Shown piece by piece: positions 5,610 to 62,831 of a stretch of 64,000 nucleotides of DNA. The position numbers and the translations under genes were made by a program. The notes below the pieces were generated by a model that was not told the DNA's origin, did no database searches, and saw only the letters and a program-made list of their open reading frames with translations. Location of the stretch: positions 284,583 through 348,582 of IMG/VR virus record IMGVR_UViG_3300027770_000025; one strand, written 5' to 3'. Numbering within the stretch: position 1 is the stretch's first letter; each line of letters starts with the position of its first letter.

Positions 5610-5638
5610 ATTGTAGAAATCAGAAGAGCCTTTGTTTC
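5610..5638 (-). promoter_or_regulatory. Putative middle promoter GAAAC-N18-TACAAT
   Basis: Same motif and spacing at 6 intergenic sites. Confidence 0.6.
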
Positions 5639-5649
5639 GGTTTACGTAT

Positions 5650-6567
5650 TTATTCTTCTGGCATTTTTGCAGAGATCTCTTCAACTTTTCTTTTGTCGAT
5701 GAATTCGGAAAGTAATGAAGCTATATTTTTTAGCATCTCTCTGTCTTGAGATCCTGAATCTACGGATCTTTTATAGTGGTTAAGTAAAGACTCCTCATCA
5801 GAATTGCTCTGTATATCCATTGCTCTCCTAGTTAAATATTTAATATAAGGATCTGGATTTTTTACATCGCTAAAACCACAGGGAACTGTAATTATACCCA
5901 TATCTTGAATTTTAAAAGAGGTTTTTTTATTTAGAGAATCGTTGTTTATATAAACACAAGGATGATGATCGCTAGAATTTAGATATATTTTAAATTCAGA
6001 TAAAAGATCATCTTTAGATCTCTTTGATATCTCGATAAGCATTCCATTATCTAGTGTAGCATCCCAAATATAATCACCGCAGGATTCAAATGATTCTATG
6101 GAACCAGGTATACCTATCAGATCCATAAGCAATTCTACATCGTCTTGTGCATTTTGTTTTATTCTATCTTGTCCTGTGGTTTTTGAATATTCTAAGTGAT
6201 TTGCAAATTCCTCGATAAAGTCATCCATTCTTGATTTGTTATCTTCTTTTGATATCCACTTCTTATTCGGATCTAAGTCTAATTCTATTATAGCGCCATC
6301 AGCATCTTTTTTAAATGAAATTGCGTCATTGGGTATCCAAACGTGATCAGATTCTTTGCCATCTGAATCGACATAGCATATAGCTATAGATGTTCCATTT
6401 TTCTTAGGAATTATTATTTTATCTGAGGGTACTTCCTTTTCTCCAGCTGTTAAATCAATTGCGGATATAATATAACCACCGTCCCACGAATCTTTAATCC
6501 CGGGGATCTGGTAAGATTGACTCTCGTTAATTTTATTCTTCTGAAAATCTTTAAATCCTAATACCAT
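5650..6567 (-). CDS. Putative internal head protein (CTS-like N-terminus MVLGFKDFQKNKINE)
   Basis: Start re-placed at ATG 6567 to avoid overlap; T4 capsid-targeting-like motif. Confidence 0.55.
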   Translation of the reverse strand: MVLGFKDFQKNKINESQSYQIPGIKDSWDGGYIISAIDLTAGEKEVPSDKIIIPKKNGTSIAICYVDSDGKESDHVWIPNDAISFKKDADGAIIELDLDPNKKWISKEDNKSRMDDFIEEFANHLEYSKTTGQDRIKQNAQDDVELLMDLIGIPGSIESFESCGDYIWDATLDNGMLIEISKRSKDDLLSEFKIYLNSSDHHPCVYINNDSLNKKTSFKIQDMGIITVPCGFSDVKNPDPYIKYLTRRAMDIQSNSDEESLLNHYKRSVDSGSQDREMLKNIASLLSEFIDKRKVEEISAKMPEE

Positions 6568-6571
6568 ATTA

Positions 6572-7031: not shown

Positions 7032-7071
7032 TATATATCCAATTTACTATTTTTAATAGCAGGAATATATA
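7032..7071. promoter_or_regulatory. Back-to-back late promoter motifs (GATATATA minus 7032-7039; AATATATA plus 7064-7071)
   Basis: Same motif lies about 18-30 nt upstream of structural genes throughout the window. Confidence 0.6.
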
Positions 7072-7100: not shown

Positions 7101-7829
7101 ATGTCAAAGAGCATAAGTCCTATATGGTTCCTTAGAGAGCCTATAGATCCGGAGCACAAAGAGTATGTGCTATTAGATTACTTAAAAGAAACGAGTAAGG
7201 GGTTAAACAAGGAAAATTGTTACCCTATAATGAAAGAAATATCACGGATTGTAAAAATACTAAACGAATTTAGAAAGGATAAGATAATTAGTGAATCAGT
7301 CAAGAAGTCTCTAGGAAAAGAGGACAGAGAATATATCAATTCTTTTGTCCTTATTAATCTTCTACCAGAGCAAAGGGAAACACTAAATATTATAATAGAA
7401 GACTCACTGGATACATTATATGATTATTCGGAGATATGTCTGGACATTTTAAAAGAAGAAGAATCTAAAATAAAAATATTTAGAATTCAATCAAAATTTG
7501 ATGACGCGGATAATCTAGTAAATTCAGGGATAGTTATTATCAGAAATATGGTAACAGATAAACTACTTAATTATTTCTTTAAATCAAACGTTAGAATGGA
7601 AACGCCAGATGGAGAAAAGGAGGTTTCAATTTTAAAAAAAATACACCTAAAAAATTCATTCTTCTCATTGAACTATGAGTATATCTACCATGAGATACTA
7701 AATGAAATAAACACAGATAATAAATACTCGCCTAAATTCTATGTTGTTGAAATATACGAGAACTTTGAAGAAACATCAGAGATCTATAAGTTAGCTAAAG
7801 AGAAATTCATAGAACATATAGGGATATAA
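7101..7829 (+). CDS. Hypothetical protein (only convincing plus-strand gene)
   Basis: 242 aa, non-overlapping, own promoter motif, ends at a bidirectional terminator. Confidence 0.8.
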   Translation: MSKSISPIWFLREPIDPEHKEYVLLDYLKETSKGLNKENCYPIMKEISRIVKILNEFRKDKIISESVKKSLGKEDREYINSFVLINLLPEQRETLNIIIEDSLDTLYDYSEICLDILKEEESKIKIFRIQSKFDDADNLVNSGIVIIRNMVTDKLLNYFFKSNVRMETPDGEKEVSILKKIHLKNSFFSLNYEYIYHEILNEINTDNKYSPKFYVVEIYENFEETSEIYKLAKEKFIEHIGI

Positions 7830-7836
7830 AGATCAC

Positions 7837-8905: not shown

Positions 8906-8963
8906 CTATATTCTTTTATTTTATCTATATATCCACAGAAGAATTATTAATCCAAGGGGTATG

Positions 8964-10937: not shown

Positions 10938-10979
10938 ATATTTCTTTTTATGGTGGAACATCGCACATGTTCCACCTAG

Positions 10980-11000
10980 CAAATATAATAAATTAGTACG
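10980..11000 (-). promoter_or_regulatory. Putative early promoter CG-N11-TATATTTG (Bacteroidota -7 box)
   Basis: TAnnTTTG is the established Bacteroidota sigmaA -7 element; CG at fixed spacing at 5 sites. Confidence 0.65.
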
Positions 11001-11011: not shown

Positions 11012-11044
11012 AAAAACCCCGATCTTTATTAAAATCGGGGTTTT
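11012..11044 (-). terminator. Intrinsic terminator
   Basis: AAAAACCCCGAT...ATCGGGGTTTT. Confidence 0.8.
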
Positions 11045-13538: not shown

Positions 13539-13811
13539 TTAGTATATATTTTCTTTAGGCCCAGCAGCATCCTTACCCGTATTGTTCTTTTGTATTTCAG
13601 CTGAAAGCGTTTTCATCAAAACCGATATTTCCTGATATATTCCAGCCTGTTGGTTTATACTTGCTATCTCTGAAGCAGTATCTCCAGGTTTTTTAGAATT
13701 CTTAGCATTTTTAATTGCATCAAATTTTTGGGAAAGAGTTGTTTTTATTCCCTGTATTTTGGTCTCCCCGCTGTCTTCCTCGTTAATAACGAATTCTCTA
13801 TATTTAAGCAT
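13539..13811 (-). CDS. Small putative internal head protein (MLKYREFVINE)
   Basis: Close match to T4 CTS MKTYQEFIAE; start re-placed at 13811. Confidence 0.6.
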   Translation of the reverse strand: MLKYREFVINEEDSGETKIQGIKTTLSQKFDAIKNAKNSKKPGDTASEIASINQQAGIYQEISVLMKTLSAEIQKNNTGKDAAGPKENIY

Positions 13812-15890: not shown

Positions 15891-15957
15891 TACAAAACAA
15901 TACTTTTTTTATATTGTATATATCCAATTGGAATTTTTATTCTTAACCAGGAAGCAC

Positions 15958-15988
15958 AAAAAAACCCTAGGATAAATCCTAGGGTTTT
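15958..15988 (-). terminator. Intrinsic terminator after major capsid gene
   Basis: AAAACCCTAGGAT-AA-ATCCTAGGGTTTT. Confidence 0.85.
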
Positions 15989-17762: not shown

Positions 17763-19727
17763 TTATCTTTTTGGAAATTTTTGCTCAAGTGCAGAAGCAA
17801 TATAATTCATATAATCTGAAGAATATCCTTGTGGTTTTGCAGTCTCGGCTACATTTTCACTCTCGTCAAGTTTTTGTACTCCAACTGTTTTAGCTCCAAG
17901 CTGACGTGTTGACCAGAAATTTTTGATCTGATAAGGTGTATCTAAATTATAGAAGTTTGACTGAGCAACAATTGATTGCTGATGTCCTTCAGATAAAGAT
18001 TCCCATACCGGAGCATATTCTGCTGGCATTTGGTCAATAAACTTAAGACCTGTTTTAGAGGTGTCTTCTGACTCGTTAAGAGTTGTTTCGTTAGCCTTTT
18101 GTGTTTCGGCTGATGTTCTTACTGCTTTAGCAGCTTCGTTGATATTTGAAGCGGTTTTTTGTGTCTTAACCGATTCTATTAATGAATCAATCTGTGAAGT
18201 TAGGTTCTCGTAGTTTCCAGCAAAGCCAGATTCGTTAAGACCTGCTTCTGCAGATAGATTTACATTTTCTATTAATGATTGCGTAGATCCTATAGGCAAT
18301 TTGTTAGCAACTGATTCTGCAATATACTCACTGTAAGCAATACCTTTGTTTAATTTCTCCGCAATGTATTCTGAATAATCTAATCCTTTATTAACATTCT
18401 CTGCTAAATAATCAGAATACTCAATGTTTTTGTTTAGATTCTCTGCAATGTATTCAGTGTATTCGATTCCGTTGTTTAATTTTTCTGCAACGTACTCAGT
18501 GTAAGCAATACCTTTATCTAAGCTTTCGCCAAGATATTCTGAATAAGCAATACCTTTATCTACGTTTTCTGCTAGATACTCAGAATATTGAACGCTTTGA
18601 TCTAATTTTTCTGCTAGGTATTTAGAATACTCGATGTTCTTATCTACGCTCTCAGCTACATACTCTGAATAAGAAATAGATTTGTCAACATTCTCAGCTA
18701 GATATTTAGCATAAGAAATATTTTTGTCTAGATTTTCAGCTAAATATTTACTGTAGCTAATATTGCTATCTAAGTTTTCTGCAAGATATTCGCCATACTT
18801 AATAGAATCTTCTAAATTCTCAGCTAAATATTCTGCATATTTTTCAAGCTTAGCAACTCTTTCCTCAAGAGCATCATTAGCTTTACTTAAATCTTCGGAT
18901 TCGCTTAGCGATGTTTTTTGGGTTTTAGCCTCTGCGATAGCTGCTTTCATCGAATCCATTTCTTTTTTCAAGAATACTGAATACTGATTAAGCTCCTCCG
19001 CAGTAACAAATTCATTGTTCTCCATAAGGACTGATTTATTTTTATTGTCTGATTTATTCACGATTTTGTTGAATTCTTCGTTATTTTCAACTTTATATAT
19101 CTTCAGTGAAGATTCTTTTTCGATACCTAAAGATTCATTTAAGCATTCTAATGAATTTAATATGCTATTATTTTTCATTGCTTGAAAATATTGAGATGTA
19201 AACCCTTCACTCTCATATACTCTTTCAAGCTGAGCATCCTTAAATCCAGGATCTGCTACTAGATCATAGGTAAAAATTTTCTTAATCGCCACCTTCTTAT
19301 CGTTGCCAACGGATCCAGCTGCTCTTGAAGAAATAGAAAGAGGAACACCAGCATCTACTAGATTCTTAGCTATTCTACCCGCTGGGGTATCAAGAAGCTT
19401 AACCTTAATTTTAAGATCCCTATTGCTTTTGTCGTAGTTAAGATCTGTCACCATATGTGAGATATTCTTAAGTGATACGTCAAATTTCTCCGGGTGATCT
19501 AATTCTCCAACTAGTCTATTCTGAGATATCTTATCTTTTAAATAATCTAGGTGAGGTAGATATTCGCTCTCTTCGTAAATTCTATTGTTGTTGTTCTCTT
19601 TACCGAAAACAGCAGCAATACCTTCCAGAACGTAATCATCTTTATCAGACTTTTTAGCTTCTAGAACGGAATTCTGTCTTTCGAGGATGAATACCATGTT
19701 TTCGTTTATTGATTGCAGTTGTGGCAT
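17763..19727 (-). CDS. gp21: Prohead protease (gp21-like) fused to scaffold/core domain
   Basis: NNNNRIY, GELDHP, SISSRAAG, TYDLVADPGF catalytic motifs; long C-terminal 14-aa repeat coiled coil; late motif at 19755-19762. Confidence 0.9.
   Translation of the reverse strand: MPQLQSINENMVFILERQNSVLEAKKSDKDDYVLEGIAAVFGKENNNNRIYEESEYLPHLDYLKDKISQNRLVGELDHPEKFDVSLKNISHMVTDLNYDKSNRDLKIKVKLLDTPAGRIAKNLVDAGVPLSISSRAAGSVGNDKKVAIKKIFTYDLVADPGFKDAQLERVYESEGFTSQYFQAMKNNSILNSLECLNESLGIEKESSLKIYKVENNEEFNKIVNKSDNKNKSVLMENNEFVTAEELNQYSVFLKKEMDSMKAAIAEAKTQKTSLSESEDLSKANDALEERVAKLEKYAEYLAENLEDSIKYGEYLAENLDSNISYSKYLAENLDKNISYAKYLAENVDKSISYSEYVAESVDKNIEYSKYLAEKLDQSVQYSEYLAENVDKGIAYSEYLGESLDKGIAYTEYVAEKLNNGIEYTEYIAENLNKNIEYSDYLAENVNKGLDYSEYIAEKLNKGIAYSEYIAESVANKLPIGSTQSLIENVNLSAEAGLNESGFAGNYENLTSQIDSLIESVKTQKTASNINEAAKAVRTSAETQKANETTLNESEDTSKTGLKFIDQMPAEYAPVWESLSEGHQQSIVAQSNFYNLDTPYQIKNFWSTRQLGAKTVGVQKLDESENVAETAKPQGYSSDYMNYIASALEQKFPKR
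18294..18839 (-). repeat. 13 tandem 42-bp (14-aa) repeats Y-x-x-Y-[LIV]-A-E-x-[LV]-x-K-x-I-x
   Basis: Directly visible in translation (YAEYLAENLEDSIK ... YSEYIAESVANK). Confidence 0.9.
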
Positions 19728-19785
19728 GTTTTTATACTACTTTTTTATGTTTATTATATATCGACAGAAAAAATTATTTTTTTGC

Positions 19786-22417: not shown

Positions 22418-23227
22418 TTATTTTTCTGTGTATATTTTATCGTAAGACTCGGAATTTACATCTATTAACTTTTCTATATATCCCTCGTTTCTAAGCTTCT
22501 TAAATGTTAAATTCCCTATAGAGAACTCACCATCTTTACTTAATCCCTCTTTTCTCATCTTCATAATTTTCTCTTTCAGCTTAGTACTTCTCTTATAAAG
22601 CTCTTTTGCATTGTGTGGTAGAACTGAAGAAGCTACTAGTCTAGTGTGAAGCTGCTCAATCTCGTATGCCATAGCCTCGAATTTTTTATTCACATCCTTC
22701 TCGTCTATCTCTGGCGGATCAAATACTGGGTTCTTTATCCATTCGTTATTCAGTAGAGAAAATAATCCAGATGAGTTATGGGGGAATTTAGCATCCTGTA
22801 TATAAAGCTCGACGTCATATCCTCGAATAGCTACATTATGTCTTAGATTCCATATGAATCTAATACCATCTAAAGCTGATTTAAGTATCTGAGGATTTTC
22901 ATCATCAATCCCCTCAAGATTAACTATAACATGAACGTCAAGATCTGATAGATTTGTGTAATTGAAATTGGCTAGTGATCCGGTTAATTGGATATCGACT
23001 ATATCTTTCTCTTTAAGTATTTCGCCGAACTTTTTAAAAAAATCACCTGCTATCCTAAGAAGTTTTTTTCTAACCCTCTGGTCTAATGTCCATTCAATAT
23101 CATCTCCCTTGGTTTTCTTAGTCCAAAAAATAGGGTTTAGCTCATCGTGATAGAATGGATTTACCTGTCTCTCTAGTATAGGAGAAGATAAGTTAATGTA
23201 ATTTTTATAAGATAATACTGAACCCAC
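22418..23227 (-). CDS. Pol-beta-superfamily nucleotidyltransferase
   Basis: GSLANFNYTNLSDLDVHV (GS...DxD) plus VELYIQD; GTG start at 23227 downstream of the late motif. Confidence 0.8.
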   Translation of the reverse strand: MGSVLSYKNYINLSSPILERQVNPFYHDELNPIFWTKKTKGDDIEWTLDQRVRKKLLRIAGDFFKKFGEILKEKDIVDIQLTGSLANFNYTNLSDLDVHVIVNLEGIDDENPQILKSALDGIRFIWNLRHNVAIRGYDVELYIQDAKFPHNSSGLFSLLNNEWIKNPVFDPPEIDEKDVNKKFEAMAYEIEQLHTRLVASSVLPHNAKELYKRSTKLKEKIMKMRKEGLSKDGEFSIGNLTFKKLRNEGYIEKLIDVNSESYDKIYTEK

Positions 23228-23265
23228 AAAAAAAGCTTTTCTTGTATATATCAAAGAAAAGCTTT
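23228..23265 (-). terminator. Terminator hairpin whose loop holds the late promoter motif
   Basis: Minus strand AAAGCTTTTCTT-TGATATATAC-AAGAAAAGCTTT-TTTT. Confidence 0.6.
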
Positions 23266-23336
23266 AGATGTTATTATAAACTGAATATTTAGCTAGGGAA
23301 GCATACCTTTAGCATAACTTCCATTACTGTACTAAC
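23245..23336. repeat. 92-bp direct repeat, copy 1
   Basis: Identical to 24013-24104 by base-by-base comparison. Confidence 0.95.
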
Positions 23337-23403: not shown

Positions 23404-23473
23404 TTTGTATATAGTTTTAATTGGTTATGAAGTAAATGTACAAATCCCCTACGTAGGAAAAAACCCTAGGCAC

Positions 23474-23505
23474 AAAAAAAATCCCTGGGGGTTACCAGGG
23501 ATTTT
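23474..23505 (-). terminator. Intrinsic terminator
   Basis: AAAATCCCTGG-GGGTTA-CCAGGGATTTT. Confidence 0.8.
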
Positions 23506-24012: not shown

Positions 24013-24104
24013 TATATATCAAAGAAAAGCTTTAGATGTTATTATAAACTGAATATTTAGCTAGGGAAGCATACCTTTAGCATAACTTCCATTACTGTAC
24101 TAAC
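24013..24104. repeat. 92-bp direct repeat, copy 2 (3' end of exonuclease gene plus late promoter)
   Basis: Identical to 23245-23336. Confidence 0.95.
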
Positions 24105-24764: not shown

Positions 24765-24809
24765 AATTTGGTTTTTTACAAAGATAATAGAATATCGCGG
24801 GAATAAAAA

Positions 24810-25709: not shown

Positions 25710-25759
25710 TTAATCTTTTTAAGATTGTACTGATAAAAGTATTTTTAGTTTCTGTTAAA

Positions 25760-29864: not shown

Positions 29865-29897
29865 ATTGTTTCTATAGTTAAAAAATGAAGTTGTTTC

Positions 29898-31244: not shown

Positions 31245-31465
31245 ATATTGTATATTTTCTACAAATATAACGAATGATAACGGTTAAAAAAAATTATTCC
31301 TGATAATTTCGGAAAGAAAATTAGCACAATGGCGAAGGGTATTTAATATCTTCTATTTCACATTTTAACCATACTGTATTGAGTCATACGGTATATTGAA
31401 GGTGTTATGCTGATATAATGAGTAGAGTCGCTTATAACTGACTATAAGCTGTATTAAGAAAATAT

Positions 31466-34699: not shown

Positions 34700-34732
34700 T
34701 TAGTATATTTTTAGTTATTCTAGTTACGAAAC

Positions 34733-35338
34733 TCAAATTAATTTCGATTGGTATTCCTTATATATCCCTGCTATATCTAAGCCCTCTACTTGAGATTTTC
34801 TAAGATATGGTATTTTATACCAGTCATCTAGATCTAAAATGCTGATCTCCCTTATGAATGTTGTCTTAAATCCGAAGACTGAATACTCATATCCCGTACC
34901 CAAAAGAATTTTTTTAAGATTTATATTTGTTAAAGGCAGTGGGGTTATTGCTCCACCTTTTGTGTAATGATTTTGGTTTTTCTCTATGATGCTAGTAAAG
35001 TTATCATAGATCTTACCCAATATTTTCACTCTATATTCGGGAGGGGTTACTATTAAATCTATACCAGAGAGTATAATCCCATTTTCTTTTGTCTGGTAAG
35101 AATCAGTACATAGCACTATGGGATTTCTGTCTATAAACTTTCTTTTCTCTGTTACCTCGCTGTCTGTAGGATAGGGAAAGGAGTATATCTCGCCAGGGAT
35201 AAACGGGGGTGAGAATTTCTTCTCCGATTTCCCGCCTTGGAAATACTTTTCTGTAAATATATCATCGGTATTCCTTACAAGATCTGCAATACTGGGAAAT
35301 TCTTTTTTATATTCTAATACTAATTCTGAATAGGTCAT
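34733..35338 (-). CDS. gp2: DNA end protector (T4 gp2-like)
   Basis: PGEIYSFPY...DRNPIVL...GIDLIVTPP pattern; adjacent to gp4 as in T4-like phages. Confidence 0.6.
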   Translation of the reverse strand: MTYSELVLEYKKEFPSIADLVRNTDDIFTEKYFQGGKSEKKFSPPFIPGEIYSFPYPTDSEVTEKRKFIDRNPIVLCTDSYQTKENGIILSGIDLIVTPPEYRVKILGKIYDNFTSIIEKNQNHYTKGGAITPLPLTNINLKKILLGTGYEYSVFGFKTTFIREISILDLDDWYKIPYLRKSQVEGLDIAGIYKEYQSKLI

Positions 35339-35831: not shown

Positions 35832-36191
35832 TTAAACGTTATAAGTGTTATCATCACCAGTTATATAACTGAATGGTATCATCTTAGGACTTTTCGGAGG
35901 ATGCAGTTTCTTCCATCCTTTTGCAAATCCATTCTTAGCTATTTGAGTAAAATAAGCAAATGGATTGTTAGATTTTTCCGGATTGAATCTGTCCCAATAT
36001 TTACAAAGATCCTCCATAGCAAATGCCATGCAATCCTCTTTGTCTTCCGGATCCTTATAAGCCATTTTTTTAGATATACCTTGTATCATAAGGTTAAACA
36101 TTCTTATGGTCTCGGGGGTAAGTTTACCCAATTTTTTTGATTCTATAACAGCGACAATAAGTTCACTATTTCTAACATATTCTTTTGCCAT
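35832..36191 (-). CDS. gp55: Late-transcription sigma factor (gp55-like, short)
   Basis: YVRNSEL, FNPEKSNNPFAYFTQI. Confidence 0.8.
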   Translation of the reverse strand: MAKEYVRNSELIVAVIESKKLGKLTPETIRMFNLMIQGISKKMAYKDPEDKEDCMAFAMEDLCKYWDRFNPEKSNNPFAYFTQIAKNGFAKGWKKLHPPKSPKMIPFSYITGDDNTYNV

Positions 36192-36254: not shown

Positions 36255-36286
36255 AAAAAAAAGAACGTAGCCTATTGTCTACGTTC
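36255..36286 (-). terminator. Intrinsic terminator
   Basis: Minus strand GAACGTAG-ACAATAGG-CTACGTTC-TTTTTTT. Confidence 0.8.
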
Positions 36287-36303
36287 CCTGATTGTTTTTA
36301 ATA

Positions 36304-38759: not shown

Positions 38760-38843
38760 GGTCTTTTGTTTTTTTAATCTTTTTATATATCCACGTTATG
38801 GATAGAAACTTTTTACTATATATTTAAACTGTGTCGAATTTTA

Positions 38844-40995: not shown

Positions 40996-41040
40996 ATAGC
41001 TGTTTTTATTTCTTTATATATATCTATAGTAAAATGCAAC

Positions 41041-41072
41041 AAAAAACCGATCCTTAAAAAGAACCGGTTTTT
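41041..41072 (-). terminator. Intrinsic terminator (imperfect stem)
   Basis: AAAAAACCGATCC...GAACCGGTTTTT. Confidence 0.6.
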
Positions 41073-41627: not shown

Positions 41628-41676
41628 ATTATTTTTTTGTATTTATTTATTTTAGTTGTTTTTGTGTGATTGTTTC

Positions 41677-42929: not shown

Positions 42930-42963
42930 ATTTTTGCTTTATGTTTTATATGAGAATTACACA

Positions 42964-43596
42964 TTAATGTTTCCCCTCCATCTTTTTTTTGATCCTACCC
43001 CTTGCTCTTCTTATTCGAGTAGCGATAGATCTTTTCTTAATGCCATACTTTTCTGCTATGTCCTTGTATTTCATACCATTAATCTCTCTGTCAATCATAA
43101 TATCTCTATAGGTATCAGGTAAAGATCTTATTTCATCTAAAACGGACTCATAAACAGAGTCAATGGTATTTTCCTCGCTAAAGAATCCATATGCTGGATC
43201 ATCCTCAATAGTATAAAATCCACCTATTTCTCCTATTGTGTTTTTAGAAGAAAGGTACTCTAAATCACCATCCTCATGAGCTATTAATCTCTTTCTAGAT
43301 TTCAGAAGTAATAGCGATTCATTTCTTGCTATGTTATAACACCATGTGGAAAAATTACCTCTCTCCATATCATATTGATCTATCTTTAGCCATATCTTGG
43401 ACATGGTATTAAGAAAAGAATCCTCTGCTAATTCCATATTTTTTAGAATCAAAAAACAATGGTTGGATACACCAGGTTTAAGTCTGTTAAATAAATCACT
43501 GAATGACTTGTCTGTTTTATTTAGAATGAAATCCTCTGCTAATGTCTGAATGTTTGTCTCTTTAATCTCCTTTACTTCTCTGTGTTCTTTTTGCAT
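42964..43596 (-). CDS. ECF-type sigma-70 factor
   Basis: Region 2 AEDSFLNT...FSTWCYNIARN; region 4 LPDTYRDIM...GMKYKDIAEKYG...SIATRIRRAR. Confidence 0.9.
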   Translation of the reverse strand: MQKEHREVKEIKETNIQTLAEDFILNKTDKSFSDLFNRLKPGVSNHCFLILKNMELAEDSFLNTMSKIWLKIDQYDMERGNFSTWCYNIARNESLLLLKSRKRLIAHEDGDLEYLSSKNTIGEIGGFYTIEDDPAYGFFSEENTIDSVYESVLDEIRSLPDTYRDIMIDREINGMKYKDIAEKYGIKKRSIATRIRRARGRIKKKMEGKH

Positions 43597-43598: not shown

Positions 43599-44204
43599 TT
43601 AGATTTGGTCAAATTGGTTAATTTTATATAATTCTATTCCAGCCTCTATTAGAAATGGAAGTGAATCTGGTTTTCTATAAACTTCTGAAAAAACTACTCT
43701 TTTTATTCCCGATTGTATTATCAATTTAGAACATTCAAAGCAGGGGGAAAGAGTTACATATATTGTAGATCCATCGGAACTTTGGGTACTCTTTGCAAGT
43801 TTTGTTATCGCGTTTGCTTCCGCATGAAGGACGTAGGGTAATGTAGCCATATTCTCATCCTCACAGATATTAGGAAATCCAGTTGGTGATCCATTATAGC
43901 CATCAGAAATTATTGATTTATCCTTTACCATTAAGCATCCCACCTGCATTCTTTTACAGTGAGAATTTTTTCCCCATGTATTAGCCATTTGTAAATAGAT
44001 AAGATCGTTTTTCATTGCCTTTGAATTTTCCCCATATAATGGGCTTTTTTGAATGGCATCGGAATGATCCCAGGAAATGTCAAAAGTTTTTCCTATTTTT
44101 TTGACGCTCCAATTATTTATGCTAAGGAAATCTGGATTGGAGAAATCAAAATCTTCTGAAACTATTTCTCGTCCTGAATAATGTGATAGTATAGATAACT
44201 CCAT
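43599..44204 (-). CDS. dCMP deaminase
   Basis: VGC, GYNG, HAEANAI, SPCFECSK; early promoter at 44221-44241. Confidence 0.9.
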   Translation of the reverse strand: MELSILSHYSGREIVSEDFDFSNPDFLSINNWSVKKIGKTFDISWDHSDAIQKSPLYGENSKAMKNDLIYLQMANTWGKNSHCKRMQVGCLMVKDKSIISDGYNGSPTGFPNICEDENMATLPYVLHAEANAITKLAKSTQSSDGSTIYVTLSPCFECSKLIIQSGIKRVVFSEVYRKPDSLPFLIEAGIELYKINQFDQI

Positions 44205-44268
44205 TAGTTTATAATTTCTGCAAACATAATAAAATTGTACGAGGAAAAAAAATATTTTACGATATTTT

Positions 44269-46023: not shown

Positions 46024-46061
46024 TTAATTTGGTTATTATCTCTATATATTTCTTAATAAGA

Positions 46062-46292
46062 TTACTTACCAAAACTAAACAACTCTTTGACCCCGCTTTT
46101 AGCTTTCGCCTCTGCATTTTCAACTTCTATGGCATCATTGAGCTTATCTATCCATATCTGATATTCGTAGAAAGGTATGCTTTCTATCCAATCAGGATCC
46201 AGACTATGCTCCTTCCATAATCTAAACTTGATATCAAAGAAGTTCTCTAAAGATATCTGAAATAACGAAAAGAGATCTGATCCCGTAGGGAA
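46062..46292 (-). CDS. gp51-like tail/baseplate chaperone ORF, probably reached by +1 frameshift
   Basis: FPTGSDLFSLFQISLENFFDIKFRLWKEHSLDPDWIESIPFYEYQIWIDKLNDAIEVEN...; no ATG/GTG/TTG start; not in ORF track. Confidence 0.65.
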   Translation of the reverse strand, partial: FPTGSDLFSLFQISLENFFDIKFRLWKEHSLDPDWIESIPFYEYQIWIDKLNDAIEVENAEAKAKSGVKELFSFGK

Positions 46293-47331: not shown

Positions 47332-47366
47332 TATTTAATCGTTTTTCTTATTATATAACAAAAAAC

Positions 47367-47397
47367 AAAAAAGGAGACAAATTAATCGTCTCCTTTT
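47367..47397 (-). terminator. Intrinsic terminator after tube genes
   Basis: AAAAGGAGAC...GTCTCCTTTT. Confidence 0.8.
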
Positions 47398-48567: not shown

Positions 48568-48613
48568 ATTCAGTTTATATTTATCTTAGTTGCCTAAAAG
48601 GCTCCAATTCGCA

Positions 48614-51964: not shown

Positions 51965-52036
51965 TATTTTTAAGATATTTTTTGCTTCTTTACTATATAT
52001 CGAAATAGAAAGTAGAATATTAGATCAATTGAATCT

Positions 52037-57152: not shown

Positions 57153-57204
57153 TATTTAGTGGATATCTTTTCTTTATATATCCACTTAAATAAATAAGAG
57201 AAGC

Positions 57205-59649: not shown

Positions 59650-60855
59650 TTATAGTGATGGCCCTTTGACCGATTTTAATATTTTAGTCTCTATAGGGGC
59701 ATTTTGTTCTATATTTTCTCCTATTATTTTTGATTTTATTATTGCTCTCTCGTGGAGCTGTTTTACGTAATCGCCAGTGTCATAATATGCTGAATTTATT
59801 AAAAGGAAACATCTAAACGGGAATGGATTTTTTCTATTCTGATTTATGAGCCTTTCGGTGCAGGTCAACATAGAATTGTAATCTTCTACACATTCAAATG
59901 TTTCTGCCATCCACATAATATGTTCATTCCTTTCACAACAGAACTGCTCTGCATACCGATAGTGATCTATTGACAATTCGTAGTCGCCAATGAATCTATA
60001 AGCGTATCCCATCAAACAAAGTGCAAGATAAGCCATCTCATTAGGAAGATGCCCTATTTTTTTATCCGCCCATCCGTTGTTTATATTCAGGTACTGCTCG
60101 AAATAAAATATACACCTTCTTGCGTACTCGTCCGCGTGATCCTTTTTGAAAGGAAATTCTGAATAATTTCCATAACAATCGGAATAACTTTTACCTAAAT
60201 ACCAAAGGTGATACATGTCATTCAGAATCTTTCCGTTTGCAACTTGGTCTATTTCAAGTTCCAAAGCATCTCTCAGAAATTTCGTAGGGGAATTCCAGGT
60301 TTGGCCATCATTAGTTATAATGTGTCTAAAAGATCTAGGTAAATTTACCCTTTGAAATCCTTCGTTATCATCTCCATATCCAGGAAGCAGTATAACTTCA
60401 TGTCTTTTATCGTGCTTAAAAATCCAGGGTAATTTAGCATTCCATAGCCATGTTCTAAAATATATGCTACCTCCAGAATCCGCAGTTATATTAAAACTCT
60501 GAATGTTTGTATTTTCTAATAATTCCCAAGCAAAATCTGAATCGACAACCAGCTGTTCATCAGCATCCATTCTAAGAATCCAATCACATCCGTGATCTGA
60601 TGTTAAACATTTTTGTAGTGCATGGTCTCTGTTAAACCCAGGATATTCCCATTTGGTCTCGTATAAGAATCCAGGGATTTGTTTTTCCCTCATGAAGTTT
60701 CTTATCAGATCCTGTGTTCCGTCTACTGATCCATTATCTTGTATAACCCAATAATCAACATACACATAGCAGGATTCAAGCATTCTTAAAATGGTATTTG
60801 CTTCATTAGCAACCATAGCATTTAAGCATATTCTACTTCTTCTTTTCATGTACAT
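59650..60855 (-). CDS. Glycosyltransferase family 2 with TPR-like C-terminus
   Basis: NEANTI, DNGSVDGT, RMDADE, HE; helical repeat C-terminus. Confidence 0.85.
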   Translation of the reverse strand: MYMKRRSRICLNAMVANEANTILRMLESCYVYVDYWVIQDNGSVDGTQDLIRNFMREKQIPGFLYETKWEYPGFNRDHALQKCLTSDHGCDWILRMDADEQLVVDSDFAWELLENTNIQSFNITADSGGSIYFRTWLWNAKLPWIFKHDKRHEVILLPGYGDDNEGFQRVNLPRSFRHIITNDGQTWNSPTKFLRDALELEIDQVANGKILNDMYHLWYLGKSYSDCYGNYSEFPFKKDHADEYARRCIFYFEQYLNINNGWADKKIGHLPNEMAYLALCLMGYAYRFIGDYELSIDHYRYAEQFCCERNEHIMWMAETFECVEDYNSMLTCTERLINQNRKNPFPFRCFLLINSAYYDTGDYVKQLHERAIIKSKIIGENIEQNAPIETKILKSVKGPSL

Positions 60856-62095
60856 AGTTTAAATAACATTCATCCACACCGAATTTAAGTCTTTCTAACC
60901 CGGAATTCTGCAATCTCGGGCTAGTTCTGGTTTCATTATCCCAATCCCAATCAACTCCTCCTATATCTAATATTCTTTGATGGATCATTTCATTATAATG
61001 ATCACGAATTAATCTAGCTCTTCTATTTATATCAATCGAATTATTGCTTGTAGTGGTGTTTTTATCGCTGTACTGGAGATATAACATCTCTTTCACATGT
61101 ATCATTCGAGTATTGATAAAAGTCCTTATAATGAGCTCAAAATCGTCCGCTACGGGAAATTTAATATTATGCCCACCTATCTTCTGGTAAATGTCTCTAC
61201 GCCATATTCTAGCGTGATTAGGCATACCTATATTAAATCTTATTGTTCTTGGATTTATATCCGCCGTATGGTGTGCTAAATACTCCTTACCGTCAGCAAC
61301 CACCATTGTGTGCCCAGCATATCCCCAGCAATATGCGTTATCATGTCGTCCGTACCAATCGCCTGATCTACCGCTATCATAGCTTTTAAATTCACCGTCA
61401 TCATAAAGTTCGCAGCAATCTGTGTATATGAAACCAGCATCCTTATATGTAATTGAAGCTTCATAGCAAATCTCAAGACAGTTGCTTATTAAAGCATCAT
61501 CATGATCCAATTCAAGAAGCCACTCACCCTCGCATAGCATAGCTGCTCTGTGCTTTGCAAGCCCTATATTACCGTTACTTATAGGGAGTATTCTATGAAT
61601 TTTAATCCTAAAATCTTTCTGTGATAGCTCGTTTAGATATTTCCATGTCAGGTCCGCATTAGAATCATCTACTATAACCCATTCCCAATCTTGCATTGTT
61701 TGAGCTTTTAGACTATCGTACATGCGATCAATCTTAATAGTGCTGGTATTATATGTTGGGGTAAATATAGAGAATTTAGGCTTGGATAAAGAGCAATTTA
61801 TAAATGTTGATTGTACAACTATATCGTTTGCTAAAACGTTATCAGGAATCTGTGAATCCCTGGAAAACATTATCTCTTTAAGTCTAAAGTCATCGACGTT
61901 TATTTGATCACCGATCGATATTATAAGATCTGGCTTATATAATGAATAATCCTCTACGACTGTATTATTATAGATCAATGAGTGGACTATTACTTCATCA
62001 AAAAGTCCTTCCTCATAATAGATATCAGATTGGAGTTTTATAGTTCCTTTTACTGGCCAGCCATAAACAATTGCACTAGGTTTTGCTGTTTGCAT
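60833..62095 (-). CDS. Glycosyltransferase family 2
   Basis: FSIFTPTYN, WEWVIVDDS, ELDHDD, ADDFEL. Confidence 0.9.
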   Translation of the reverse strand: MQTAKPSAIVYGWPVKGTIKLQSDIYYEEGLFDEVIVHSLIYNNTVVEDYSLYKPDLIISIGDQINVDDFRLKEIMFSRDSQIPDNVLANDIVVQSTFINCSLSKPKFSIFTPTYNTSTIKIDRMYDSLKAQTMQDWEWVIVDDSNADLTWKYLNELSQKDFRIKIHRILPISNGNIGLAKHRAAMLCEGEWLLELDHDDALISNCLEICYEASITYKDAGFIYTDCCELYDDGEFKSYDSGRSGDWYGRHDNAYCWGYAGHTMVVADGKEYLAHHTADINPRTIRFNIGMPNHARIWRRDIYQKIGGHNIKFPVADDFELIIRTFINTRMIHVKEMLYLQYSDKNTTTSNNSIDINRRARLIRDHYNEMIHQRILDIGGVDWDWDNETRTSPRLQNSGLERLKFGVDECYLNYVHEKKK

Positions 62096-62673
62096 TATAT
62101 CTCGGTATTAAAAAAGAATAATTGAAATAATCTTCCGTTTTCTTTACTGTCACCAAAATAGTCTAAAGAGACATGAAATAGATCTCCCCTATAAAGGGCA
62201 AGTCTATTATACACATTCCCTATTTTATCGACCATCTCCCATTTAGTGTAGTCTTGTGAATATCTATTATGAATAGCATTTGCATTCTCCTCCTCCGTGT
62301 GCTCATAATTTTTCCAATTACGGAGGCCATTTTCTTTAAGTTTAAATAATCCAGTCCCTGATGAAATAGGTGCATCTGGGGTTAGATAAAGAACACCCGC
62401 CCAATTTGTTGTATAATCAGAATGTATCCATGATCTATCAGAGGCTAAGGTGTATTGAAAAGCTCCAGTTGAATCATCGCCCCACCAAGTAACGTTTCCG
62501 GCAAAAGGTCTGATTATATCCTGAATTAATCCCTTAGAACTATCAGTCATAAAAGATGCTGTTCTCTGTCCTGGGTAATTCCCAATTGAGCTAAATTCTT
62601 GGCTAAGAGCAAAAGCCCTAACCTCATCGGGATTATCATAAAAGTCATCAACTATTAAACTTTGTACTCTCAT
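62095..62673 (-). CDS. 2OG-Fe(II) oxygenase-like protein (DUF6445-like)
   Basis: VDDFY, YPGQRT, WIHSD (HxD), WAGVLYL, YNRL...FH, RLFQLFF; middle promoter at 62695-62723. Confidence 0.75.
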   Translation of the reverse strand: MRVQSLIVDDFYDNPDEVRAFALSQEFSSIGNYPGQRTASFMTDSSKGLIQDIIRPFAGNVTWWGDDSTGAFQYTLASDRSWIHSDYTTNWAGVLYLTPDAPISSGTGLFKLKENGLRNWKNYEHTEEENANAIHNRYSQDYTKWEMVDKIGNVYNRLALYRGDLFHVSLDYFGDSKENGRLFQLFFFNTEI

Positions 62674-62831
62674 AATTTACGATATAATTTATAGATTATA
62701 CTAAAAAATTTAGCTTAGGTTCCAGTAAAATTAATAAAAGATATGGATTTTATATCCAGTATACAGTTGAATGAGTTAGGTTAAATCAGAACCATATAAT
62801 ATCAAGAAATAAATAGCTGATCGAAAAAAAA

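What the first reader, a model, noticed from the sequence alone, without database searches (positions are those of the whole stretch)
5610..62723. Complete three-tier promoter/sigma cascade readable from the DNA
Three distinct intergenic motifs partition the genes by function. Class I, CG-N11-TAnnTTT(G/A), occurs at 10980, 23433, 24779, 31262 and 44221 (kinase-asnB, exonuclease, ligase, dCMP deaminase-ECF sigma operon). Class II, G(A/G)AA(C/T)-N17/18-TAnAA(T/A), occurs at 5610-5638, 25724-25752, 29869-29897, 36226-36254, 41649-41676 and 62695-62723 (clamp loader/RNase H operon, gp55-like sigma, glycosylation cluster). Class III, (G/A)ATATATA about 18-30 nt before the start, occurs at 7032, 7064, 8926, 15917, 19755, 23245, 24013, 38784, 41017, 46043, 51994 and 57175 (virion genes). 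The wiring is self-consistent: the ECF sigma gene is under class I, the gp55-like gene under class II (GAAAC resembles an ECF -35), and structural genes under class III. Inference: host sigmaA, then phage ECF sigma, then gp55-like sigma, with the ECF sigma replacing T4 MotA/AsiA middle transcription.
Basis: partly seen in the sequence, partly recalled or inferred. Interest (0 to 1): 0.8.

Follow-up and report, generated by a model that had tools for sequence, protein, structure and literature searches.

The report
Three promoter classes, huge Bacteroidota phage
This stretch of a ~349-kb uncultivated T4-like "huge phage" carries three conserved promoter types and two phage sigma-factor genes, wired so that the host's RNA polymerase would be handed from host sigma to a phage ECF-type sigma and then to a T4 gp55-type sigma; no transcript or biochemical data yet test that hand-over.

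Summary
All three motifs sit at the stated coordinates, on the coding strand, just upstream of start codons. They are kept at orthologous positions in many metagenomic relatives whose leaders have otherwise diverged. Class III (GATATATA) occurs 14/14 on the coding strand here and 223 vs 2 in relatives, and is avoided on the antisense strand. Class II (GAAAC-N17/18-TAnAAw) shows a sharp spacing peak at 18. Class I carries the Bacteroidota sigma-A box TAnnTTTG behind a T-run and a conserved CG. The window is the last 64 kb of a ~349-kb huge phage related to Lak megaphages. The ECF-type sigma gene lies behind class I and the gp55-like gene behind class II, in every relative examined. Assigning class I to host sigma-A and class III to the gp55-like protein is well grounded. 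Assigning class II to the ECF sigma rests on architecture, on the AAC-type -35 (its closest solved homolog, SigW, reads TGAAAC) and on exclusion. No transcription start sites could be obtained, and 82% of the genome is unseen. Verdict: a new variant of known sigma cascades, pairing a sigma-swap middle tier with a T4-like late tier.

The parts
42964..43596 (-). ECF-type (group IV) sigma factor gene, 210 aa, second gene of a class I operon
   Evidence: Pfam Sigma70_r2 (res 35-103) plus r4_2 (150-201). Passes the TIGR02937 ECF superfamily cutoff, 64.6 vs 42.9 bits. Best PDB relative is SigW 5WUQ, E 5e-12. 158 relatives in IMG/VR.
35832..36191 (-). gp55-like late sigma gene, 119 aa, sigma region 2 only
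   Evidence: phrog_234 'late sigma transcription factor', E 4e-15. Pfam Sigma70_r2, 26.4 vs 24 bits. Its only PDB hit is T4 gp55 7D7C_F, E 4.7e-4.
43599..44204 (-). dCMP deaminase, first gene of the class I operon that carries the ECF sigma
   Evidence: Pfam dCMP_cyt_deam_1, E 8e-25; phrog_174, E 4e-52
44221..44241 (-). Class I box CG-N11-TATGTTTG, 16 nt before dCMP deaminase
   Evidence: conserved in most relatives
31262..31282 (-). Class I box CG-N11-TATATTTG, 17 nt before the ATP-dependent DNA ligase (29898-31244)
   Evidence: the TAnnTTTG box is kept in 31 of 39 distinct orthologous leaders
24779..24799 (-). Class I box CG-N11-TATCTTTG, 14 nt before the 3'-5' exonuclease (24057-24764)
10980..11000 (-). 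Class I box CG-N11-TATATTTG, after a terminator, before the kinase-like and asnB-like genes. It overlaps the TTG start of the mechanically called ORF, so the true start is probably downstream of the inverted repeat.
23433..23453 (-). Class I variant box CG-N11-TACATTTA, after a terminator, before a 24-aa ORF
   Evidence: weakest member, conservation not tested
62695..62723 (-). Class II box GGAAC-N18-TATAAT, 21 nt before the DUF6445 gene and the glycosyltransferase cluster
42945..42973 (-). Class II box GAAAC-N18-TATAAA, 15 nt before the 148-aa gene. The -35 lies in the last codons of the sigma gene.
   Evidence: the intergenic -10 is conserved
41649..41676 (-). Class II box GAAAC-N17-TAAAAT, 21 nt before the 176-aa gene
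   Evidence: TAGAAACAA...CTAAAA is kept down to 41% protein identity
36226..36254 (-). Class II box GAAAT-N18-TAGAAA, abutting a terminator, 34 nt before the gp55-like gene
   Evidence: GAAAT in close relatives, GAAAC in distant ones
34717..34745 (-). Class II box GAAAT-N18-TAGAAT, 17 nt before portal paralog 33089-34699. Paired with a class III box.
   Evidence: present in all 17 representatives
29869..29897 (-). Class II box GAAAC-N18-TAGAAA, 4 nt before the clamp loader operon (28920-29864 and following genes)
   Evidence: kept in 24 of 38 distinct orthologous leaders under a strict regex
25724..25752 (-). Class II box GAAAC-N18-TACAAT, 14 nt before the UvdE-like endonuclease
   Evidence: 4 of 4 orthologous leaders
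5610..5638 (-). Class II box GAAAC-N18-TACAAT, 5 nt before the 89-aa gene
5339..5367 (-). Class II box GAAAC-N18-TAAAAA, 8 nt before the 222-aa gene. It lies inside the preceding gene.
   Evidence: conservation not tested
57175..57182 (-). Class III box GATATATA, 22 nt before the 829-aa virion gene, then the 259-aa gene and the large terminase
51994..52001 (-). Class III box GATATATA, 29 nt before the tail sheath gene
   Evidence: kept in all 15 representatives that have the gene
48578..48585 (-). Variant late box GATAAATA, 10 nt before tail tube gene 48013-48567
   Evidence: Conserved in most relatives; replaced by a canonical GATATATA in L011 and L012. Coordinates. Function less certain because of the short distance to the ATG.
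47351..47359 (-). Variant late box GTTATATAA, after the terminator, before the 365-aa gene 46234-47331
   Evidence: Invariant in all 26 leaders shown (46 distinct leaders found); coordinates
46043..46050 (-). Class III box AATATATA, 19 nt before the 584-aa gene
41017..41024 (-). Class III box GATATATA, after a terminator, 21 nt before the four-gene operon 40995-38844
38817..38824 (-). Class III box AATATATA, distal of a tandem pair before the 766-aa gene
   Evidence: both boxes kept down to about 40% protein identity
38784..38791 (-). Class III box GATATATA, proximal of the tandem pair, 24 nt before the 766-aa gene
34759..34766 (-). Class III box GATATATA inside the 3' end of the gp2-like gene, 59 nt before the portal paralog.
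   Evidence: present in all 17 representatives
24013..24020 (-). Class III box GATATATA, 19 nt before the 156-aa gene
23245..23252 (-). Class III box GATATATA, 17 nt before a GTG at 23227, the likely true start of gene 22418-23227
22475..22482 (-). Class III box GATATATA, 64 nt before the 874-aa gene.
19755..19762 (-). Class III box GATATATA, 27 nt before the prohead protease-like gene and the major capsid gene
15917..15924 (-). Class III box GATATATA, after a terminator, 26 nt before the 382-aa gene
13543..13550 (-). Class III box AATATATA, 18 nt before the 825-aa gene.
8926..8933 (-). Class III box GATATATA, 20 nt before the 220-aa gene
7032..7039 (-). Class III box GATATATA, 19 nt before the 146-aa gene (GTG start)
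7064..7071 (+). Class III box AATATATA on the + strand, 29 nt before the only + strand gene, 7101-7829
15961..15988 (-). Intrinsic terminator (12-bp stem plus T-run) upstream of a class III box
23478..23505 (-). Intrinsic terminator (11-bp stem) upstream of the class I variant box
36260..36289 (-). Intrinsic terminator (11-bp stem). Its T-run abuts the class II -35 of the gp55-like gene and insulates that gene from the upstream late gene.
   Evidence: hairpin kept in relatives
41042..41072 (-). Intrinsic terminator (14-bp stem) between the class II 176-aa gene and the next class III unit
   Evidence: hairpin kept with compensatory changes in relatives
47369..47397 (-). Intrinsic terminator (12-bp stem) after the sheath and tube operon
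11012..11044 (-). Terminator-like hairpin with a 9-nt loop, upstream of class I box 10980
   Evidence: Read from the sequence. Not called by the scan, whose loop limit is 8.

Best explanation
The window is the terminal 64 kb of a ~349-kb T4-like huge phage of a Bacteroidota host. The phage has no RNA polymerase gene in view and appears to redirect the host core enzyme by swapping sigma factors.

Step 1 (early). Host sigma-A reads class I promoters. These have an A/T-rich upstream region, a run of at least 7 T over the -33 region, a conserved CG near -25, and the Bacteroidota -7 box TAnnTTTG. Class I expresses nucleotide-metabolism genes, a ligase, an exonuclease and the phage ECF-type sigma.

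Step 2 (middle). The ECF-type sigma has a sigma-2 and a sigma-4 domain. It reads the bipartite class II promoters GAAAC(a)-N17/18-(c)TAnAAw. Class II expresses replication and repair genes, a glycosyltransferase cluster and the gp55-like gene. A terminator insulates the gp55-like gene from upstream late transcription.

Step 3 (late). The gp55-like protein has sigma region 2 only. It reads the single 8-9 bp class III element GATATATA(a), with variants AATATATA, GTTATATAA and GATAAATA, about 19-29 nt before virion genes. This element has no -35, as in T4 late promoters.

Shown here: the motifs, their geometry, strand specificity, conservation and antisense avoidance; the identities of the two sigma genes; and which box precedes which gene.
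Inferred: which sigma reads which class, and the temporal order.

Sub-confidences: the boxes are promoters, 0.9. Class I is read by host sigma-A, 0.8. Class III is read by the gp55-like protein, 0.8. Class II is read by the ECF sigma, 0.6.
For: Genome identity and host.
- The sigma gene is 100% identical to one on a 348,582-bp IMG/VR contig.
- The capsid is nearest to huge phage LR756500, Lak Prevotella phages, and Tenacibaculum and Flavobacterium jumbo phages.
- SD-like cores occur in 2 of 62 leaders against a 14.6% background, and leaders are 55% A. E. coli-type sigma-70 promoters are at or below chance.

Class I.
- TAnnTTTG is the Flavobacterium sigma-A box at -12 to -5 (PMC9723704).
- The box is conserved before dCMP deaminase and ligase. 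Lak-B5 also enriches TGTATCTTTG upstream of genes.

Class III.
- 14/14 GATATATA on the coding strand; 9 fully intergenic, p 5e-10.
- 223 vs 2 by strand in 1.15 Mb of relatives.
- Antisense count 0 vs 10-16 expected in 13 diverged relatives, P 1e-7 to 6e-5.
- The logo shows an 8-9 bp core with no upstream element, matching the T4 late promoter architecture and the region-2-only gp55 (PMC2988020).
- The gp55-like protein's only PDB hit is T4 gp55.

Class II.
- Sharp spacing peak at 18, repeated at 17-18 on the coding strand only in relatives.
- Unbiased k-mer enrichment recovers GAAACAA.
- Conserved before the gp55-like gene, g41627, g42929, the clamp loader, the UvdE-like gene and the portal paralog.
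- ECF promoters typically carry AAC in the -35 with a group-specific -10, and SigW uses TGAAAC (PMC5758882).
- The phage sigma's best solved homolog is SigW across both domains. Its region 4.2 reads TRIRRAR against SigW TRIHRGR.

Wiring.
- The sigma gene lies behind class I and the gp55-like gene behind a terminator plus class II, in all relatives with enough sequence.
- No MotA-box signal.
Against: - No transcript 5' ends. The metatranscriptome contigs were too sparse.
- The class II -10 (TAnAAw) lacks the CGT typical of ECF promoters, including those of Flavobacterium.
- Measured from GAAAC to TA, the spacer of 17-18 is at or beyond the 14-17 range quoted for ECF sigmas.
- The ECF sigma gene is not autoregulated and has no recognisable anti-sigma partner. 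Both features are common among cellular ECF sigmas.
- Only about 18% of the genome was seen, so other sigma factors or activators may exist.
- ECF sigma and class II co-occur in every relative, so there is no negative control.
- More distant phages with 25-32% identical ECF homologs (LR756500, Lak) show no clear GAAAC-N18 peak in 40-kb samples.
- The gp55-like protein lacks about 60 C-terminal residues of T4 gp55. No gp33 or gp45 homolog was identified in the window.
- gp4-like and gp2-like head-completion genes sit behind class II rather than a conserved class III box.
Confidence: 0.55

Rival explanations
1. Class II promoters are read by host sigma-A, or another host sigma, remodelled or recruited by a phage activator, as in T4 MotA/AsiA sigma appropriation or Mu Mor. 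The ECF-type sigma then serves a different, unseen regulon.
For: - The class II -10 (TAnAAT) looks like a generic sigma-70-family -10 rather than an ECF CGT box.
- Two conserved class II genes of unknown function flank the sigma gene and could be co-factors.
- 82% of the genome is unseen.
Against: - The Bacteroidota sigma-A -10 equivalent is TAnnTTTG. Class II lacks the TTTG part, whereas T4 middle promoters keep the host -10.
- There is no MotA-box signal and no MotA/AsiA family hit among the roughly 61 window proteins scanned against PHROGs and/or Pfam.
- The -35 GAAAC matches the ECF AAC rule and SigW's TGAAAC.
- Neither small protein resembles a known transcription factor fold.
Confidence: 0.2
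2. Class II is read by a further phage-encoded sigma located outside the window. The ECF-type sigma seen here reads something else, for example a subset of class I-like or unrecognised promoters.
For: - Huge phages can encode several sigma-like proteins (PMC7824862).
- Only the last 64 kb of 349 kb was examined.
Against: - Within the window, three promoter classes match three available sigmas (host sigma-A plus two phage sigmas) with fitting architectures.
- Every intergenic gap of 45 nt or more, apart from three that look like unannotated coding sequence, is accounted for by one of the three classes, a variant late box or a terminator, leaving no orphan motif for the ECF sigma.
- No paralog from the same contig appeared among the top 80 of 158 sigma relatives. 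This is weak evidence.
Confidence: 0.1
3. Classes I and II are not separate temporal tiers. Both fire early, with the ECF sigma simply boosting a subset, so the programme is two-tier (pre-replicative and late).
For: - No timing data exist.
- Class I and class II genes are interleaved and functionally similar: ligase and an exonuclease versus clamp loader, an exonuclease and UvdE.
- T4-like cyanophages are thought to lack a distinct middle mode (my own recollection of the literature, not checked here).
Against: - The ECF sigma must first be made from a class I promoter, so class II genes cannot precede it.
- The gp55-like gene is insulated by a terminator and depends on class II. This enforces at least a delay.
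Confidence: 0.1
4. The boxes are not promoters. They are other conserved leader signals, such as RNA processing sites or translation enhancers, or compositional artefacts of AT-rich leaders.
For: - Total motif counts equal chance in this AT-rich DNA.
- Bacteroidota leaders are A-rich, which favours TAnAAw.
Against: - Fixed bipartite spacing.
- Absolute strand specificity and antisense avoidance.
- Positions immediately downstream of terminators.
- Conservation amid diverged flanks.
- Boxes lie 19-64 nt from start codons rather than at a fixed translation-related distance.
- Class I matches a known sigma-A consensus.
Confidence: 0.03

Closest known systems
Bacteriophage T4 transcription programme: sigma-70 early; MotA/AsiA sigma appropriation for middle; gp55/gp33/gp45 for late
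   Same: - T4-like virion and replication genes.
- A gp55 homolog consisting of sigma region 2.
- Late promoters that are a single ~8-bp -10-type element without a -35, placed just upstream of virion genes.
- Three tiers in which the late sigma gene is itself under the middle tier.
   Different: - The late box is GATATATA, two mismatches from TATAAATA, which is never intergenic here.
- The middle tier shows no MotA box and no detectable MotA/AsiA. A two-domain ECF-type sigma is the candidate instead.
- Early promoters follow the Bacteroidota TAnnTTTG rule.
- The gp55-like protein is 119 aa against 185 aa in T4.
- gp33 and gp45 were not seen in the window.
Bacillus phage SPO1 sigma cascade: host sigma-A, then gp28, then gp33/gp34
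   Same: Successive replacement of the host sigma by phage-encoded sigmas, each tier expressing the sigma for the next (PMC13401047 abstract).
   Different: - Unrelated phage lineage and host phylum.
- The SPO1 late sigma is not gp55-like.
- Here the middle sigma is ECF-type and the late one is a region-2-only protein.
Coliphage phiEco32 gp36 sigma with gp79
   Same: A phage-encoded two-domain sigma (the N-terminal domain reads the -10, the C-terminal domain the -35) takes over host core RNAP after an early sigma-70 phase (PMC12276001).
   Different: - One sigma serves both middle and late genes, with an AATGTA element at -11.5.
- It needs the co-factor gp79, which displaces host sigma-4. No gp79-like fold was found here.
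- It is a podovirus of E. coli.
Cellular ECF sigma factors, for example B. subtilis SigW and E. coli sigma-E
   Same: - Sigma-2 plus sigma-4 architecture.
- Conserved region 4.2 helix.
- The candidate cognate -35, GAAAC, fits the AAC rule and SigW's TGAAAC.
   Different: - The -10 is TAnAAw, not CGT.
- No autoregulatory promoter.
- No recognisable anti-sigma.
- Encoded by a lytic-type phage and placed under a host-type promoter.
Comparative genomics of 'group 2' jumbo phages (Iyer et al. 2021, PMC7824862)
   Same: That study already notes that T4-like jumbo phages, including Lak, encode a minimal sigma, a fuller cellular-type sigma and gp33, and are likely to use them to recruit host RNAP.
   Different: It describes gene content only. 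It gives no promoter motifs, no wiring between the sigma genes, and no ECF classification of the fuller sigma.

Membership tests
T4-type late transcription (gp55 system) | A gp55 homolog: a small sigma-like protein with region 2 only | tested here: met
   phrog_234, E 4e-15. Pfam Sigma70_r2 above cutoff, with no r4. Its only PDB hit is T4 gp55 7D7C_F, E 4.7e-4, residues 4-104 vs 9-121.
T4-type late transcription (gp55 system) | The late promoter is a single ~8-bp -10-type element with no -35 | tested here: met
   A logo of 78 distinct orthologous sites shows a GATATATAa core and no conserved upstream element. Architecture as described in PMC2988020.
T4-type late transcription (gp55 system) | Late promoter consensus TATAAATA | tested here: not met
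   TATAAATA occurs 12 times, none intergenic. The box used is GATATATA. A GATAAATA variant lies before the tube gene.
T4-type late transcription (gp55 system) | gp33 co-activator and gp45 sliding clamp encoded by the phage | tested here: inconclusive
   No gp33 or gp45 family hit among the window proteins scanned. A clamp loader is present. 82% of the genome was not examined.
T4-type late transcription (gp55 system) | Clamp-dependent activation coupled to replication | not testable with these tools
   Requires biochemistry. The gp55-like protein lacks the C-terminal ~60 residues of T4 gp55 but has its own conserved tail, IPFSYITGDDNxYN.
ECF (group IV) sigma factors | Sigma-2 and sigma-4 domains only, about 200 aa | tested here: met
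   r2 at 35-103 and r4_2 at 150-201 in 210 aa. TIGR02937, 64.6 vs 42.9 bits. SigW 5WUQ, E 5e-12.
ECF (group IV) sigma factors | Cognate promoters with an AAC motif in the -35 | tested here: met
   Class II -35 is GAAAC, GGAAC or GAAAT. The rule is from PMC5758882. This holds only if class II is the cognate set, which is inferred.
ECF (group IV) sigma factors | A -10 containing CGT (common, but group-specific) | tested here: not met
   Class II -10 is (c)TAnAAw, with no CG in the two preceding positions.
ECF (group IV) sigma factors | Autoregulation: the cognate promoter lies upstream of the sigma's own operon | tested here: not met
   Only a class I box precedes the dCMP deaminase-sigma operon, here and in relatives.
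ECF (group IV) sigma factors | A co-encoded anti-sigma factor | tested here: inconclusive
   The downstream 148-aa gene has no Pfam, NCBIfam or PHROG hit, no informative Atlas hit and no PDB fold match (best E 0.05).
Bacteroidota sigma-A promoters | A -7 box TAnnTTTG | tested here: met
   Four of five class I sites carry TAnnTTTG and one carries TACATTTA. Conserved in relatives. Consensus from PMC9723704.
Bacteroidota sigma-A promoters | A -33 element TTTG or TTG about 19 bp upstream | tested here: not met
   TTTG-N17-21-TAnnTTTG and TTG-N18-20-TAnnTTTG find no intergenic site. A run of at least 7 T covers the -33 region instead, followed by a conserved CG near -25.
T4 middle promoters (MotA/AsiA sigma appropriation) | A MotA box (TGCTTtA) near -30 combined with the host -10 | tested here: not met
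   TGCTT.A occurs 37 vs 39 times by strand. Two of 37 lie near starts against 7.7% expected, and none is paired with a -10 near a start.

The most novel reading that the evidence does not exclude
A widespread lineage of freshwater T4-like huge phages of Bacteroidota has domesticated an ECF-type sigma as its dedicated middle-gene sigma. This sigma would have been freed from anti-sigma control and autoregulation, placed under a host-type early promoter, and retuned to an A/T-rich -10 (GAAAC-N17/18-TAnAAw), a new ECF promoter specificity. The programme would then be a pure sigma-swap cascade, with an SPO1-like middle tier grafted onto a T4-like gp55 late tier, in place of T4's sigma appropriation.
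Probability: 0.5. Interest if true: 0.7.

Novelty: new variant of a known kind. Interest (0 to 1): 0.6.

Why it matters
Huge phages of Bacteroidota are known almost only from metagenomes, and nothing is known about how they time gene expression. Here the regulatory map can be read from DNA: three promoter classes, their terminators and the two sigma genes. The map is shared by relatives found with two independent gene queries (158 loci with the ECF sigma, 267 with gp55). That gives four practical gains:
- A way to sort hundreds of genes of unknown function in these genomes into early, middle and late classes.
- Defined promoter-sigma pairs that can be tested in vitro with Flavobacterium or Bacteroides core RNAP. 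If confirmed, they could serve as orthogonal expression parts for Bacteroidota, where standard genetic tools work poorly.
- A natural example of how gp55 specificity drifts, from TATAAATA to GATATATA with a GATAAATA intermediate.
- A candidate answer to how T4-like phages that lack MotA/AsiA run a middle phase.

Tried and rejected
- Megablast of 22 kb against GenBank phages found nothing. The relationship is visible only at protein level.
- Metatranscriptomes: six freshwater RNA runs hold fragments, but the contigs are at most 375 nt at depth 2-7, with no start or end pile-ups. They give no TSS information and could be DNA carry-over.
- Co-variation or co-occurrence of the ECF sigma with class II:
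  - Lak and LR756500 have only 25-32% identical homologs and show no clear GAAAC-N18 peak in 40-kb samples.
  - The ECF-less Chryseobacterium phage MA9V-2 shows none of the three motifs, but it is too distant to count as a control.
  - Within the clade, every locus has both the sigma and the box, so there is no negative control.
- The two conserved class II genes flanking the sigma (148 aa and 176 aa) were tested as candidate anti-sigma, co-activator or sigma-4 mimic. They have no family hits and no informative Atlas hit. Their AlphaFold models are confident (pLDDT 87.6 and 83.3), but no PDB fold match reaches E 0.001.
- The strict Bacteroidota -33/-7 regex finds no intergenic site, so class I is not a textbook host promoter.
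- Canonical sigma-70 promoters are at or below chance.
- Rfam and tRNA scans of the window found nothing.
- A Markov simulation for motif avoidance timed out. An analytic expectation replaced it.
- The idea that the motifs are compositional artefacts was rejected on spacing, strand, avoidance and conservation.

Full report
WHAT THE WINDOW IS

Nearly all long ORFs lie on the minus strand, and GC is about 35%. Profile searches give a T4-like myovirus gene set:
- Virion genes: major head protein, prohead protease, tail sheath, two tail-tube paralogs, two portal paralogs, large terminase, a gp4-like head-completion protein, a gp2-like DNA end protector and tail-fibre pieces.
- Replication, repair and metabolism genes: clamp loader, ATP-dependent ligase, several exonucleases, a UvdE-like endonuclease, dCMP deaminase, guanylate kinase, an asparagine-synthase-like gene and glycosyltransferases.

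There is no nucleotide-level relative in GenBank phages. The ECF sigma gene is 100% identical to one on a 348,582-bp IMG/VR contig, and the coordinates place the window at the last ~64 kb of that contig. The capsid protein is closest to a 462-kb metagenomic huge phage (43%), the Lak megaphages of Prevotella (44%), and Tenacibaculum and Flavobacterium jumbo phages.

Three independent features point to a Bacteroidota host:
- These relatives.
- The near absence of Shine-Dalgarno cores, found in 2 of 62 leaders against a 14.6% background, with leaders that are 55% A.
- Use of the TAnnTTTG box, with no excess of E. coli-type promoters.

CHECKING THE OBSERVATION

Class III. GATATATA occurs 14 times, all on the coding strand. 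Nine are fully intergenic, although only 4.1% of the window is intergenic (p 5e-10). They sit 19-29 nt before start codons. T4's TATAAATA is never intergenic. The raw count of RATATATA is at chance, so placement is what is non-random. In 80 related loci (1.15 Mb) the octamer occurs 223 times on the coding strand and 2 on the other. In 13 diverged relatives it is absent from the antisense strand against 10-16 expected (P 1e-7 to 6e-5). It is also over-represented on the sense strand, 56 against 15-23 expected. Selection against spurious, potent promoters would produce this pattern.

Class II. Varying the spacer from 8 to 30 gives 8 start-proximal sites at 18 and 1 at 17, and 0 at spacers 13-16 and 19-24. 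The same 17-18 peak, on the coding strand only, appears in the relatives. Unbiased k-mer enrichment in upstream windows recovers ATATATA/GATATATA and GAAACAA without prior input.

Class I. Five of 11 regex hits are intergenic (p 4e-5). The five share a longer pattern: an A/T-rich upstream region, a run of at least 7 T, CC, CG, N11, then (T)TAnnTTT(G/A).

PHYLOGENETIC FOOTPRINTING

Using window proteins to locate orthologs in representatives at 100% down to about 40% protein identity, the boxes persist at the same positions while the surrounding leader diverges:
- Class III is kept before the sheath gene, g40995, g38759 (two tandem boxes, both kept) and g46023.
- Class II is kept before the gp55-like gene, g41627, g42929, the clamp loader (24 of 38 distinct leaders under a strict regex) and the UvdE-like gene (4 of 4).
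- Class I is kept before dCMP deaminase and ligase (31 of 39).
- The in-operon control gene, gp4-like, has no class I or II box.

The portal paralog 33089-34699 carries both a class III box (about 59 nt upstream) and a class II box (about 17 nt) in all 17 representatives.

GTTATATAA lies at 47351-47359 and is invariant in all 26 leaders shown. GATAAATA lies at 48578-48585; the same position holds a canonical GATATATA in two relatives. With those added, every intergenic gap of 45 nt or more, apart from three that look like unannotated coding sequence, holds a box, a variant late box or a terminator. Strong terminators sit directly upstream of many boxes.

THE TWO SIGMA GENES AND THE WIRING

Gene 42964-43596 (210 aa) has sigma-70 regions 2 and 4_2 only. 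It passes the ECF superfamily cutoff and best resembles Bacteroidetes ECF subfamilies and SigW. Its best solved relative is B. subtilis SigW across both domains (E 5e-12), with a well-conserved region 4.2 helix. It is the second gene of an operon headed by dCMP deaminase, behind class I box 44221.

Gene 35832-36191 (119 aa) is a region-2-only protein of the 'late sigma' PHROG. Its only PDB match is T4 gp55, over residues 9-121 of 185. It sits behind a terminator whose T-run abuts a class II box. This arrangement holds in every relative, with GAAAT in close relatives and GAAAC in distant ones.

MECHANISM

Class I matches the experimentally defined Flavobacterium sigma-A box, TAnnTTTG at -12 to -5 (PMC9723704). 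It does not carry a textbook -33 TTTG. A T-run covers that region and a conserved CG sits near -25, so it is a phage-specific version of the host promoter.

Class III has exactly the architecture of T4 late promoters, an 8-bp downstream element with no -35. That suits a sigma lacking region 4 (PMC2988020). Its sequence differs from T4's at two positions.

Class II is bipartite with fixed spacing, as required by a sigma with both domains. Its -35 obeys the ECF 'AAC' rule and equals SigW's TGAAAC minus the T (PMC5758882).

With three classes and three available sigmas, the assignment by architecture is coherent. It enforces an order: the ECF sigma must be made from class I before class II can fire, and gp55 from class II before class III.

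The weak link is the assignment of class II to the ECF sigma:
- The -10 is TAnAAw, not CGT.
- The spacer is at the long end of the ECF range.
- The sigma is neither autoregulated nor paired with a recognisable anti-sigma.
- I could find no negative control in nature.
- No transcript ends could be obtained.
- Only 18% of the genome is in view.

COMPARISON WITH WHAT IS KNOWN

Sigma cascades are classic. In SPO1 the order is host sigma-A, then gp28, then gp33/34. In phiEco32, gp36 acts with gp79 (PMC12276001). T4 itself uses appropriation (MotA/AsiA) for middle genes and gp55/gp33/gp45 for late genes.

Iyer et al. (PMC7824862) already recorded that T4-like 'group 2' jumbo phages, including Lak, encode a minimal sigma and a fuller sigma plus gp33. 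[quoted passage not shown] I found no description of the promoter classes or of the wiring between the two sigma genes in this clade.

No MotA-box signal and no MotA/AsiA hit were found in the window. The finding is therefore a new variant of a known kind: a T4-like late system coupled to a sigma-swap middle tier that uses an ECF-type sigma with an unusual A/T-rich -10.

VERDICT

- Observation: confirmed and extended.
- Interpretation: partly supported. The wiring is shown; the sigma-promoter assignments and timing are inferred; 'complete' is an overstatement for 64 of 349 kb.
- Confidence: 0.55 in the full three-tier model. About 0.9 that the boxes are promoters. About 0.8 each for class I being read by sigma-A and class III by the gp55-like protein. 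About 0.6 for class II being read by the ECF sigma.
- Interest: 0.6.

Noticed in passing
window 31466-33079 and 33089-34699; 47420-47995 and 48013-48567: There are two tandem portal-protein paralogs (both phrog_213, about 50% identical) and two tandem tail-tube paralogs. Only the upstream portal paralog has its own dual class II plus class III promoter. A duplicated portal is unusual for a tailed phage.
   Followed up: partly
window 19094-19101 and 4952-4959: Two GATATATA boxes lie inside genes. Each is followed by an in-frame start codon at a promoter-typical distance: GTG 19061, 32 nt on, giving a 432-aa C-terminal product of the 654-aa protease-like gene; and ATG 4925, 26 nt on, giving 87 aa. 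These may be nested genes, for example a scaffold within the protease gene.
   Followed up: partly
window 10952-10976: A perfect 10+10 inverted repeat, GGTGGAACAT-GTGCG-ATGTTCCACC, lies immediately downstream of class I box 10980-11000. It would fall in the 5' UTR of the kinase-like and asnB-like operon and could be an operator or a regulatory hairpin.
   Followed up: no
window about 23245-23290 and 24013-24058: A direct repeat of about 45 nt (ATATTCAGTTTATAATAACATCTAAAGCTTTTCTTTGATATATA) duplicates a whole class III promoter region in front of two different genes.
   Followed up: no
L061, L063, L069, L073 (upstream of gp55 homologs): In the most distant relatives, a GC-rich hairpin followed by a T-run lies between the class II box and the gp55 start codon. 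This could be an attenuator or terminator gating late-sigma expression.
   Followed up: no
window 35832-35900 (C-terminus of the gp55-like protein): The gp55-like protein lacks the C-terminal third of T4 gp55. It ends in a tail, IPFSYITGDDNxYN(V/I), that is strongly conserved across relatives and is a candidate sliding-clamp or partner-binding peptide. The codons for FSYIT also create a GTTATATAA box at 35861-35869, 40 nt before the gp4-like gene. That box is kept in only a minority of relatives.
   Followed up: partly
window 42483-42929 and 41097-41627: Two conserved class II genes next to the sigma gene (148 aa and 176 aa) give confident AlphaFold models (pLDDT 87.6 and 83.3) but have no family, Atlas or PDB fold relatives. 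The 148-aa protein ends in a long hydrophobic helix.
   Followed up: yes
window 31283-31465 and 62724-62831: About 180 nt and about 110 nt of intergenic DNA are not explained by any box, terminator, Rfam family or tRNA.
   Followed up: partly
window terminators at 15961-15988, 23478-23505, 41042-41072, 11012-11044 and equivalents in relatives: Terminator T-runs are regularly followed by GTGC, GTTGC or GTG (TTTTTTGTGC...), here and in relatives. The meaning of this conserved post-terminator motif is unknown.
   Followed up: no
window 23329-23403: A 24-aa ORF is the only coding potential behind the class I variant box 23433-23453. It lies between a terminator and the next class III box, and could be a small early peptide or a non-coding early transcript.
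   Followed up: no
window 63264-63487: Collagen-like G-A-Q/G-x-y triplet repeats lie within what looks like one long tail-fibre gene that the mechanical ORF list splits (62832-63263 matches tail-fibre C-termini).
   Followed up: no
L082 (Prevotella phage Lak-B5, 378090-418377): Upstream regions in this Lak segment are enriched for TGTATCTTTG, a TAnnTTTG-type box (6 of 6 occurrences of TATCTTTG are upstream of ORFs). Standard-code ORF coverage is low (0.62), and the gp55 homolog's frame is interrupted by in-frame stop codons in a standard-code translation. Both are what stop-codon recoding would produce.
   Followed up: no
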